A stretch of 64,000 nt of DNA, taken from NCBI RefSeq assembly GCF_006345805.1, contig NC_043019.1, positions 27,589,360 through 27,653,359 on the forward strand. Reading direction: 5' to 3'. Both the position numbers and the translations under genes were made by a program. The stretch's first letter is position 1, and each line of letters starts with the position of its first letter. This DNA is from Octopus sinensis (taxonomy: Eukaryota). The notes beneath the pieces were generated by a model. It did no database searches and had not been told where the DNA came from. It saw only the letters and a program-made list of their open reading frames with translations. Shown one piece after another: positions 1,465 to 53,794 of this stretch.

Positions 1465-1542
1465 CTTTGAAAGGATAAATACTTTCTGGTGTTGTTGTTG
1501 CTGTAGGCTCAGCAGTTGTTGTTGTTGTTGTAGTAGTTTGAT
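1465..1542 (-). CDS. Exon U, Thr-rich linker (internal if spliced at 1465; terminal if read through to the TAA at 1217-1219)
   Basis: tacag|AT; [25 protein letters not shown], then a phase-1 donor AAG|gtatta. The frame also stays open to 1217. Confidence 0.6.

Positions 1543-53794: not shown

What the first reader, a model, noticed from the sequence alone, without database searches (positions are those of the whole stretch)
1465..53794. Mosaic extracellular protein with a non-canonical layout: 13 spaced LDLa modules, a Frizzled CRD, then 4 LDLa
Seen: 21 exons splice into one frame with 17 six-Cys LDLa modules and a complete 10-Cys FZ domain. Known: FZ plus LDLa is the signature of corin-type proteases (FZ-LDLa5-FZ-LDLa3-SRCR-protease), where the LDLa modules are closely packed. 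Here 13 modules precede the FZ, and most are followed by their own S/T/P-rich spacer, like beads on a mucin string, whereas the 4 modules after the FZ have almost no spacer. I do not recognise this architecture. Inference: it may be a lineage-expanded corin/nudel-like protease stem, or a protease-less lipoprotein/Wnt-binding matrix or egg-coat protein.
Basis: partly seen in the sequence, partly recalled or inferred. Interest (0 to 1): 0.78.

Follow-up and report, generated by a model that had tools for sequence, protein, structure and literature searches.

The report
Octopod corin-like protease stem
This stretch holds most of the non-catalytic "stalk" of a large octopus gene related to the protease corin: 18 calcium-binding LDL-receptor modules and one Frizzled-type domain. 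It is an unusual lineage-specific layout of a known kind of protein rather than something fundamentally new.

Summary
On the minus strand, 21 canonical AG/GT exons (53794..1465) join into one open frame. All are phase 1-1 and all lengths are divisible by 3. They encode 18 LDLa modules, not 17: 13 before and 5 (not 4) after a complete 10-Cys Fz domain split over two exons. Pre-Fz modules are separated by 8-32-residue S/T/P-rich linkers and post-Fz modules by 1-4 residues.

The closest relative by far is a cuttlefish gene auto-annotated "CORIN". A largely spliced cuttlefish transcript contig joins orthologues of the window's last LDLa exons to a sixth LDLa, an SRCR-like domain and a trypsin-fold protease with an intact catalytic triad. 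So the window most likely holds the stem of a corin-type mosaic serine protease whose catalytic end lies beyond coordinate 1.

It fails several corin criteria. It has one Fz rather than two, and 13+6 LDLa rather than 5+3. In the orthologue the activation site is non-basic and residue 189 is Thr.

An intronic LINE places the window in an octopod, yet no octopod protein in the database matched these exons.

Verdict: a new variant of a known kind, of modest interest.

The parts
53660..53794 (-). Exon 1 of the part seen: LDLa W1 plus a 10-aa linker. It has an acceptor, so at least one exon lies upstream.
   Evidence: (38.7 bits); orthologue of cuttlefish S1, 72% non-Cys identity
52899..53030 (-). 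Exon 2: LDLa W2
   Evidence: (42.2 bits); orthologue of S2/S3, 66%
48449..48643 (-). Exon 3: LDLa W3 plus a 30-aa poly-Thr linker. The only phase-1 donor available forces inclusion of the T-rich linker.
46815..46961 (-). Exon 4: LDLa W4 (CDVIPDC type)
45040..45186 (-). Exon 5: LDLa W5 (CDVIPDC type, nearest to W4)
44214..44360 (-). Exon 6: LDLa W6
43383..43550 (-). Exon 7: LDLa W7 (CD.WPDC type)
41707..42186 (-). Exon 8: LDLa W8 plus an S/T/P-rich linker. There are two equally good phase-1 donors: 41983 gives a 32-aa linker and 41707 gives a ~124-aa mucin-like linker.
   Evidence: ORF stays open 106 codons past the first donor, P~0.005
39509..39652 (-). Exon 9: LDLa W9
   Evidence: (43.9 bits)
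37395..37541 (-). Exon 10: LDLa W10
33519..33662 (-). Exon 11: LDLa W11
   Evidence: orthologue of S6
22467..22619 (-). Exon 12: LDLa W12
   Evidence: orthologue of S7, 62%
20381..20512 (-). Exon 13: LDLa W13, the last module before the Fz
   Evidence: orthologue of S8
12356..12592 (-). Exon 14: Fz CRD, Cys1-Cys7
   Evidence: (56 bits); 54% identical to the cuttlefish Fz
10131..10241 (-). Exon 15: Fz CRD, Cys8-Cys10, with a divergent C-terminal part shared with cuttlefish
7546..7659 (-). Exon 16: LDLa W14.
   Evidence: 26.4 bits, cut-off 24.1; 71% non-Cys identity to cuttlefish S9
6219..6329 (-). Exon 17: LDLa W15
   Evidence: orthologue of S10, 69%
5252..5359 (-). Exon 18: LDLa W16 (short first loop)
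   Evidence: orthologue of S11, 67%
4389..4496 (-). Exon 19: LDLa W17
   Evidence: orthologue of S12, which is present in the cuttlefish transcript but skipped in model P0001
2561..2668 (-). Exon 20: LDLa W18. The frame is still open and it ends in a phase-1 donor.
   Evidence: orthologue of S13
1465..1542 (-). Candidate exon 21: 26-aa poly-Thr/Pro linker, phase 1-1. Uncertain, because it has no cuttlefish counterpart and could be an intronic (ACA)n run.

Best explanation
The window contains about 52 kb of the extracellular, non-catalytic stem of an octopod gene. That gene is orthologous to the cuttlefish gene annotated CORIN (CAE1329895.1), a mosaic S1 serine protease.

Layout:
- N-terminus: unknown.
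- 13 LDLa modules, each on its own phase 1-1 exon together with an S/T/P-rich linker that is probably O-glycosylated.
- One Fz cysteine-rich domain.
- 5 tightly packed LDLa modules.
- Beyond window coordinate 1, inferred from the orthologue: a sixth LDLa, an SRCR-like domain and the protease domain.

How it most likely works (inferred):
- The Ca2+-binding LDLa modules and the Fz CRD act as exosites that capture a substrate or anchoring ligand, as the Fz and LDLa domains do in corin.
- The glycosylated linkers turn the 13 distal modules into an extended, flexible, multivalent 'beads on a string' arm.
- Fz-LDLa6-SRCR-protease forms a compact catalytic head.

The array grew by tandem duplication of phase 1-1 exons in its middle, while both ends stayed 1:1 with cuttlefish. 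Because every exon is symmetric, exon skipping would keep the frame, so isoforms with different bead numbers are possible.

What is shown: the exons, domains, linker pattern, orthology and tandem-duplication pattern.
What is inferred: the protease end in the octopod, glycosylation, ligand binding and isoform variation.
For: Exon and domain anatomy:
- 18 LDLa modules, all on one strand and all phase 1-1 with AG/GT.
- Pfam gives 18 LDLa stretches at 499 bits and Fz at 56 bits.
- 14 of 18 modules keep all four acidic Ca2+ ligands and the rest keep 3 of 4. No Cys is lost and there is no in-frame stop.

Orthology:
- The top homologue is cuttlefish P0001 at 671 bits; the next hit scores 388. Its cluster mate P0209 is named CORIN.
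- Exon-by-exon collinearity is 54-70%.
- Modules W1-2 and W11-18 are reciprocal best matches of S1-3 and S6-13, at 45-72% against a 29% background.
- Linker lengths agree at 9 or more junctions.

Link to a protease:
- The Logan contig L001 (5,987 bp, SRR6517992) carries LDLa2 through to the stop codon in 5.1 kb. It reads Fz, then 6 LDLa, then SRCR_2 (31.7 bits), then Trypsin (141 bits), with AAHC, DIALL and GDSGG present.
- Its 4th and 5th post-Fz LDLa are the orthologues of window exons 19 and 20.
- The cuttlefish gene spans 113 kb, consistent with the window gene running off the edge.

Relation to corin:
- W13-Fz-W18 is collinear with corin LDLa5-Fz2-LDLa6-8 (E=2e-32), and the Fz is nearest to corin Fz2.

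Taxon:
- The intronic LINE is 86-87% identical to Octopus RT proteins.
Against: - No SRCR or protease exon is in the window, so the catalytic end is inferred from an orthologue at only 43% overall identity.
- No transcript evidence exists for the window species, and no octopod protein matched these exons even though octopod proteomes are in the database.
- The N-terminus (signal peptide or TM) is unknown in both species.
- The cuttlefish contig has two short frame breaks.
- Uniform phase 1-1 means the exons would join in frame even if they belonged to two genes.
Confidence: 0.8

Rival explanations
1. A protease-less secreted or matrix protein made only of LDLa beads, a Fz CRD and mucin-like linkers. 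It would act as a lipoprotein- or Wnt-binding scaffold or an egg-coat component. This could be either the whole gene in octopods or an alternative isoform.
For: No protease or SRCR exon is in the window. By sequence the Fz CRD is as close to true Frizzled receptor CRDs (E~4e-10) as to corin Fz2. LDLa-only proteins of similar size are annotated in gastropods (P0006, P0015). No octopod protease-containing orthologue was retrieved.
Against: The last certain exon (2668-2561) ends in a phase-1 donor with the frame open. In a cuttlefish transcript, its orthologous module is followed by another LDLa, SRCR and a protease. Cuttlefish S14 has no partner in the window, which is what is expected if the gene simply continues.
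Confidence: 0.1
2. Two adjacent genes on the same strand, for example an LDLa/mucin gene (exons 1-13) and a separate Fz-LDLa-protease gene. They only appear to splice together because all exons are phase 1-1.
For: The uniform phase makes in-frame joining uninformative. Long introns (11 kb and 8 kb) with repeats and a LINE lie between W11/W12 and W13/Fz. The linker style changes abruptly at the Fz.
Against: The cuttlefish transcript contig L001 runs from LDLa2 through the Fz to the protease in a single contig. Modules on both sides of the Fz are 1:1 orthologous and collinear with that one gene. No terminal-exon or first-exon features were seen between them.
Confidence: 0.04
3. A fragment of an LDL-receptor-family endocytic receptor (LRP-like) rather than a protease.
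For: Many database hits are LRP1/LRP2/VLDLR, matched through their LDLa arrays.
Against: No EGF or YWTD beta-propeller exon exists anywhere in the window: all 1,005 HSPs from LRPs and other mosaics fall on the LDLa/Fz exons. LRPs do not contain an Fz CRD. The hits score far below the cuttlefish orthologue.
Confidence: 0.02
4. A decaying or unexpressed gene remnant in the octopod, which would explain why no octopod protein model matches it.
For: There is no octopod match, although Octopus proteins are present in the database. Introns are heavily invaded by satellites and retroelements.
Against: All 21 exons are intact, with 118 of 118 expected Cys present, canonical splice sites, no frameshift or stop, and Ca2+ ligands largely conserved. 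This is unlikely without purifying selection over the divergence seen from cuttlefish.
Confidence: 0.04

Closest known systems
Cuttlefish (Acanthosepion/Sepia pharaonis) 'CORIN' gene models CAE1329895.1 / CAE1329893.1 and transcript contig SRR6517992_51434
   Same: It is the orthologue. The order is collinear: an LDLa array with S/T/P linkers, one Fz, then tightly packed LDLa. Terminal and post-Fz modules pair 1:1. The Fz shares the same unusual C-terminal part (CG..SILMD.CDWL.D.S.WC).
   Different: Cuttlefish has 8 pre-Fz LDLa plus a ~560-aa IPLVTA..HHGT tandem-repeat block. The window has 13 pre-Fz LDLa and at most a ~124-aa mucin-like linker. The cuttlefish SRCR and protease are seen; the octopod ones are not in the window. 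The name is an automatic homology label, and I found no functional study.
Vertebrate corin (atrial natriuretic peptide-converting enzyme; type II transmembrane serine protease)
   Same: It uses the same domain set of Fz, LDLa, SRCR-like and S1 protease. W13-Fz-W14..18 aligns collinearly with corin LDLa5-Fz2-LDLa6-8 (29.5% identity, E=2e-32), and the Fz is nearest to corin Fz2. Post-Fz LDLa are tightly packed as in corin.
   Different: Corin is Fz1-LDLa5-Fz2-LDLa3 with 1-2-residue gaps. Here there is one Fz, 13 spaced LDLa before it and 5-6 after. The orthologue's protease has QEY|IIGG and Thr189, whereas corin has KR|ILGG and Asp189. With the Fz-to-C-terminus query, the best non-mollusc protease hits were TMPRSS9, ovochymase and matriptase, not corin. 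Molluscs have no known ANP substrate (background knowledge).
Insect corin (Drosophila CG2105 / honey-bee SP30)
   Same: It is an invertebrate single-Fz mosaic protease: TM-Fz-LDLa-LDLa-SRCR-SP (PMC1761132).
   Different: It has only about 2 LDLa, none before the Fz, and no mucin-spaced array.
Other invertebrate LDLa-rich mosaic proteases (nudel; Trichinella Fz-L9-SP; brittle-star L10-SP-Fz-L6; insect modular serine protease/HP14; enteropeptidase with a mucin-like region)
   Same: They combine LDLa arrays, sometimes an Fz or mucin-like stretches, with an S1 protease. This shows the parts list is widely shuffled.
   Different: Domain order differs. None in the sample has a long spaced LDLa array, then a single Fz, then packed LDLa, then SRCR and a protease. 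Nudel has two protease domains and no Fz.

Membership tests
Corin (vertebrate-type) | Frizzled-type CRD(s) in the stem | tested here: met
   Pfam Fz scores 56 bits against a cut-off of 32.1, all 10 Cys are present, and it is nearest to corin Fz2 (E=6e-13).
Corin (vertebrate-type) | Two Fz domains bracketing LDLa1-5, then LDLa6-8 (Fz-L5-Fz-L3) | tested here: not met
   The 52 kb holds only one Fz, with 13 LDLa before it and 5 after. The cuttlefish orthologue also shows only one. A further Fz upstream of the window cannot be excluded.
Corin (vertebrate-type) | Closely packed LDLa modules | tested here: not met
   Post-Fz gaps are 1-4 aa, as in corin, but pre-Fz gaps are 8-32 aa against corin's 1-2.
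Corin (vertebrate-type) | C-terminal SRCR-like and S1 protease domains with a catalytic triad | not testable with these tools
   They are not in the window. The feature is met in the cuttlefish orthologue: SRCR_2 at 31.7 bits, Trypsin at 141 bits, with AAHC/DIALL/GDSGG.
Corin (vertebrate-type) | Trypsin-like specificity (Asp189) and a basic activation site (R|ILGG) | tested here: not met
   This was tested on the orthologue only. Cuttlefish has Tyr|IIGG and Thr189, the gastropod relative has Phe|VAGG and Ser189, and corin has Arg|ILGG and Asp189.
Corin (vertebrate-type) | N-terminal type II transmembrane anchor | not testable with these tools
   Exon 1 of the visible part has an acceptor, so upstream exons exist. 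None is recognisable in 53795-64000, and the cuttlefish models are also N-terminally incomplete.
LDL-receptor family (LDLR/VLDLR/LRP) | LDLa array followed by EGF-precursor homology (EGF plus YWTD propeller) and a TM | tested here: not met
   tblastn with LRP2/LRP4/VLDLR-type proteins gives no HSP outside the LDLa/Fz exons. The whole-model Pfam scan reports only LDLa.
Nudel-type protease | Two S1 protease domains interspersed with LDLa, and no Fz | tested here: not met
   An Fz is present and there is no protease exon between LDLa modules. The orthologue has one C-terminal protease.
Frizzled / sFRP / MFRP Wnt-binding proteins | Fz CRD combined with 7TM, NTR or CUB domains | tested here: not met
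   The Fz CRD resembles FZD8/5/4 CRDs, but the window holds no 7TM, NTR or CUB exon.
Cephalopod LDLa(n)-Fz-LDLa6-SRCR-protease gene (cuttlefish 'CORIN' orthogroup) | Collinear module-by-module orthology, including the distinctive Fz C-terminal part and post-Fz LDLa 1-5 | tested here: met
   reciprocal best modules at 45-72%, the Fz at 54%, and matching linker lengths.

The most novel reading that the evidence does not exclude
This may be a cephalopod-specific class of mosaic protease that is not a corin in function. A self-activating, chymotrypsin-like enzyme (activation site after Tyr/Phe, residue 189 Thr/Ser) would sit at the base of a hyper-expanded arm of LDLa 'beads' with mucin-like spacers. 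Because every exon is phase 1-1, the bead number could vary by exon skipping. Such an arm could act as a multivalent recognition device, for lipoprotein, microbial or symbiont ligands, that triggers proteolysis on clustering. This would be analogous to insect modular serine protease/HP14 or complement C1r/MASP. It could also relate to the 'corin' transcripts reported as light-organ-specific in bobtail squid.
Probability: 0.1. Interest if true: 0.6.

Novelty: new variant of a known kind. Interest (0 to 1): 0.3.

Why it matters
If the reading is right, it documents how exon shuffling and tandem duplication of symmetric phase 1-1 exons reshaped a corin-type protease in cephalopods. The result is a much longer, mucin-spaced, multivalent LDLa arm attached to a protease whose predicted specificity differs from corin.

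Practical consequences:
- The automatic 'CORIN / ANP-converting enzyme' label on cephalopod genes is architectural, not functional.
- Whole-protein Pfam scans mask the Fz domain in these Cys-rich proteins, so architecture queries in databases will miss this family.
- The gene appears to be absent from the octopod protein sets in the database searched, so it may be an annotation gap.

It does not open a long-standing question, and the domain types and their general roles are well known.

Tried and rejected
I re-ran it with the first Fz exon alone. The top hits were multi-Fz proteins, plus Fz/LDLa/MAM/trypsin mosaics at 42% identity or less. This was of little help for orthology.
- A look-up of P0001's contig found nothing on record. 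So cuttlefish exon phases and upstream exons could not be compared.
- A search for an octopod orthologue carrying the protease, using the cuttlefish Fz-to-C-terminus as query, found none. The next best hit was a gastropod LDLa5-SRCR-protease.
- Long ORF extensions past the donors of exons 6 and 10 were considered as giant linker exons and rejected. They run through (CA/TA)n and pyrimidine-only repeats that lack stop codons by composition. Only exon 8's extension looks like real coding sequence.
- I looked for signal-peptide, TM or further LDLa/Fz exons in 53795-64000 and found nothing convincing. That region is mostly decayed retroelement.
- Rfam and tRNA scans of the window gave no hits.
- Literature searches for cephalopod or mollusc corin found only homology-based mentions.
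- Structure prediction was not run. The domain calls were already well above threshold, and spliced sequences are not accepted by that tool.

Full report

Yes, with one correction. The window is AT-rich (38% GC) eukaryotic DNA full of microsatellites and satellites.

A regex scan, and a six-frame HMM scan built from the first 14 modules, found LDLa-type six-Cys modules only on the minus strand. There are 13 between 53789 and 20397 and five between 7657 and 2562. Nothing on the plus strand reached E<0.01.

Pfam, which is independent of my local HMM, puts every module above the Ldl_recept_a gathering score. The weakest, at 7659-7546, scores 26.4 against a cut-off of 24.1. Pfam counts 18 stretches (499 bits) in the spliced product.

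The Fz CRD is split over two exons, 12592-12356 (Cys1-7) and 10241-10131 (Cys8-10). On its own it scores 56 bits against a cut-off of 32.1. It matches solved FZD8/5/4 CRDs at E~4e-10.

**2. Gene model**

Every module sits on its own exon. Each exon is preceded by a polypyrimidine-AG acceptor 2 nt before the frame and followed by a GT donor 1 nt after it. All 21 exons are therefore phase 1-1 with lengths divisible by 3, and they splice to 989 aa without a stop.

Three caveats apply:
- Uniform phase 1-1 means that in-frame joining is automatic and does not by itself prove a single transcript.
- Exon 8 has two equally good phase-1 donors, 41983 and 41707. The ORF stays open just far enough to use the second one (P~0.005). 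That choice would give a ~124-aa mucin-like linker.
- Exon 21 (1542-1465) is a poly-Thr run with no cuttlefish counterpart, and it may be an intronic (ACA)n tract.

**3. The "beads on a string" claim**

It holds quantitatively:
- Pre-Fz inter-module linkers are 8-32 aa (median 14). They are 41% S/T/P, against 11% inside modules.
- Post-Fz linkers are 1-4 aa (Mann-Whitney p=0.002).
- A vertebrate corin has gaps of 1-2.

For exon 3 the only phase-1 donor lies beyond the poly-Thr tract, so that linker must be coding.

Fourteen of the 18 modules keep all four acidic Ca2+-cage side chains, and the other four keep three. All Cys are retained. This argues for functional, selected modules.

**4. What is it?**

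The spliced product's best database hit stands far above the generic LDLa background. It is Acanthosepion (Sepia) pharaonis CAE1329893.1 (P0001), at 671 bits and 43% identity; the next hit scores 388 bits. Its 90%-identity cluster includes the longer model CAE1329895.1, named CORIN (P0209, 1,639 aa), and two Logan-assembled products.

One of these, P0211, lies on a 5,987-bp contig from run SRR6517992. That contig packs LDLa2 through the stop codon into 5.1 kb, whereas the cuttlefish gene spans 113 kb and the orthologous window exons span more than 50 kb. It is therefore a largely spliced transcript. It has two short frame breaks that look like small retained introns.

The contig reads as follows:
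- LDLa modules.
- A 560-aa IPLVTA..HHGT repeat block.
- Further LDLa modules.
- Fz.
- Six LDLa.
- SRCR_2 (31.7 bits).
- Trypsin (141 bits), with AAHC, DIALL and GDSGG present.

tblastn and module-by-module comparison show collinear orthology:
- W1=S1, W2=S2/S3 and W11-W18=S6-S13, at 45-72% non-Cys identity against a 29% background.
- The Fz is 54% identical.
- Linker lengths match at nine or more junctions.

Crucially, the window's last two LDLa exons (4496-4389 and 2668-2561) are the orthologues of the 4th and 5th post-Fz modules of the transcript. In that transcript they are followed by a 6th LDLa (S14), the SRCR-like domain and the protease. S14 has no partner in the window.

No SRCR or protease sequence occurs anywhere in the window. 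The window's last certain exon also ends with the frame open and a phase-1 donor. The simplest reading is that the gene continues beyond coordinate 1 into S14, SRCR and the protease.

**5. Evolution of the array**

W4-W6 and W8-W10 lack 1:1 cuttlefish partners and are most similar to their own neighbours. W4/W5 share CDVIPDC, and W7-W10 share CDGW.DC. The middle of the array therefore expanded by local tandem duplication of phase 1-1 exons. In the cuttlefish lineage it shrank instead, or was replaced by the repeat block. Both ends and the post-Fz block are conserved.

**6. Relation to known families**

The segment W13-Fz-W14..18 aligns collinearly with corin LDLa5-Fz2-LDLa6-8 (E=2e-32). The Fz is closer to corin Fz2 (E=6e-13) than to Fz1 (E=2e-6). 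So the protein works like, and is built like, the membrane-distal half of corin with a long extra arm.

It fails several defining corin features:
- It has one Fz, not two.
- It has 13+5(6) LDLa, not 5+3.
- The distal modules are spaced rather than packed.
- In the orthologue, the activation site is QEY|IIGG and residue 189 is Thr. The gastropod relative P0121 has QSF|VAGG and Ser189. Corin has KR|ILGG and Asp189.

With the Fz-to-C-terminus query, the best non-mollusc hits were TMPRSS9, ovochymase-2, enteropeptidase and matriptase rather than corin.

Insect corin is TM-Fz-LDLa-LDLa-SRCR-SP (PMC1761132).

- Only the cuttlefish entries show L(>=8)-Fz-L-SP.
- Vertebrate corins are uniformly Fz-L-Fz-L-SP.
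- Other invertebrates shuffle the same parts differently, for example Trichinella Fz-L9-SP and Amphiura L10-SP-Fz-L6.

LRP, nudel, MFRP and Frizzled memberships are excluded by the absence of their other defining domains. All 1,005 HSPs from 15 diverse mosaics fall on the model exons.

**7. Mechanism (inferred)**

By analogy with corin and LDLR-family ligand binding (established background knowledge), the Ca2+-loaded LDLa modules and the Fz CRD are exosites for a substrate or anchoring ligand. The S/T/P linkers, probably O-glycosylated, would stiffen and extend the 13 distal modules into a multivalent arm. The tightly packed Fz-LDLa-SRCR-protease would form the catalytic head.

The non-basic activation site and the non-Asp residue 189 in the orthologue suggest a chymotrypsin-like enzyme, possibly self-activating. 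Its substrate is unknown, and molluscs have no known ANP.

**8. Context**

A 463-aa intact LINE RT ORF in the W11-W12 intron is 86-87% identical to Octopus vulgaris and O. bimaculoides proteins. It is 48-58% identical to everything else, apart from two unnamed fragments at 73-76%. The window is therefore octopod.

Octopod proteomes are in the database: P0083, P0375 and P0400 are examples. Yet no octopod protein matched these exons. The gene may be unannotated there.

The literature mentions cephalopod "corin" only as a homology label, for example light-organ-specific expression in bobtail squid (PMC10329180, PMC6172772). Which paralogue those papers mean is unknown.

**9. Verdict**

The "corin-like protease stem, lineage-expanded" reading is supported through orthology. 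The protease-less reading is disfavoured but not excluded for the octopod.

This is a new variant of a known kind: a cephalopod-specific rearrangement and expansion of the corin-type mosaic protease. It is already auto-annotated as CORIN in one cuttlefish but is otherwise undescribed. Interest is modest (0.3).

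Noticed in passing
window 14351-18672: A very regular 42-bp satellite of 103 copies at 95% identity, filling 4.3 kb of the intron between the last pre-Fz LDLa exon and the Fz exon. It produces long spurious ORFs on both strands.
   Followed up: no
window 15-754: A 20-bp-unit satellite with a 111-171-bp higher-order periodicity at the window's low edge, in the presumed intron downstream of exon 21.
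   Followed up: no
window 29422-30813 (minus strand): An intact 463-aa non-LTR retrotransposon ORF (RVT_1 at 101 bits plus a PHD-like zinc finger) inside the 11-kb W11-W12 intron. It accounts for the local GC peak (51%). It is 86-87% identical to Octopus vulgaris and O. bimaculoides proteins, which places the window in an octopod.
   Followed up: partly
window ~54450-58500 (minus strand): Decayed LTR-retrotransposon-like fragments just upstream of the first visible LDLa exon. RT is at 57015-57344 and RT-RNase H at 54612-55031, scattered over all three frames with stops. I described the pieces only and did not reconstruct the element.
   Followed up: partly
window 41707-41983: Exon 8 has a second equally strong phase-1 donor 276 nt downstream, with the ORF open up to it. 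This is a possible alternative 5' splice site that would switch between a 32-aa and a ~124-aa S/T/P-rich linker.
   Followed up: partly
whole spliced model; also P0001 and P0211: Pfam's Fz hit disappears when the complete Cys-rich protein is scanned, although the isolated segment scores 51-56 bits. This is probably a composition or bias filter effect. The precomputed domain lists for the cuttlefish proteins therefore lack Fz, and database architecture queries would miss this family.
   Followed up: partly
L001 nt ~560-2250 (cuttlefish transcript contig); P0209 residues ~215-775: A ~560-aa tandem repeat of ~19-residue IPLVTA.PIHHGT(K/R)I units is transcribed in frame between two LDLa modules of the cuttlefish orthologue. 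The window has nothing equivalent at the sequence level.
   Followed up: no
P0083 (Octopus vulgaris 'ANP-converting enzyme-like', a paralogue): Its protease domain reads GDDGG where GDSGG is expected and lacks an I(V/I)GG activation motif. It may be a non-catalytic protease homologue. Its architecture (SRCR-kringle-LDLa array with TTT linkers-SRCR-protease) also has spaced LDLa modules.
   Followed up: no
cuttlefish locus GCA_903632075.3: A 2,063-aa gene model with no Pfam hit lies on the same strand and ends 4.9 kb upstream of the CORIN model. It could be the missing 5' part of the gene or an unrelated repeat protein.
   Followed up: no
window 52235-52723, 51731-51899, 39162-39304, 37043-37321: Long microsatellites and minisatellites lie in introns close to exons: (TGTA)122, (TG)85, (ACC)48 and an 18-bp AGGAGGAGCTGGAAGGGG x15 repeat. 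The last of these reads as poly-Pro in frame directly after exon 10. I judged it non-coding because pyrimidine-only sequence lacks stop codons by composition.
   Followed up: partly
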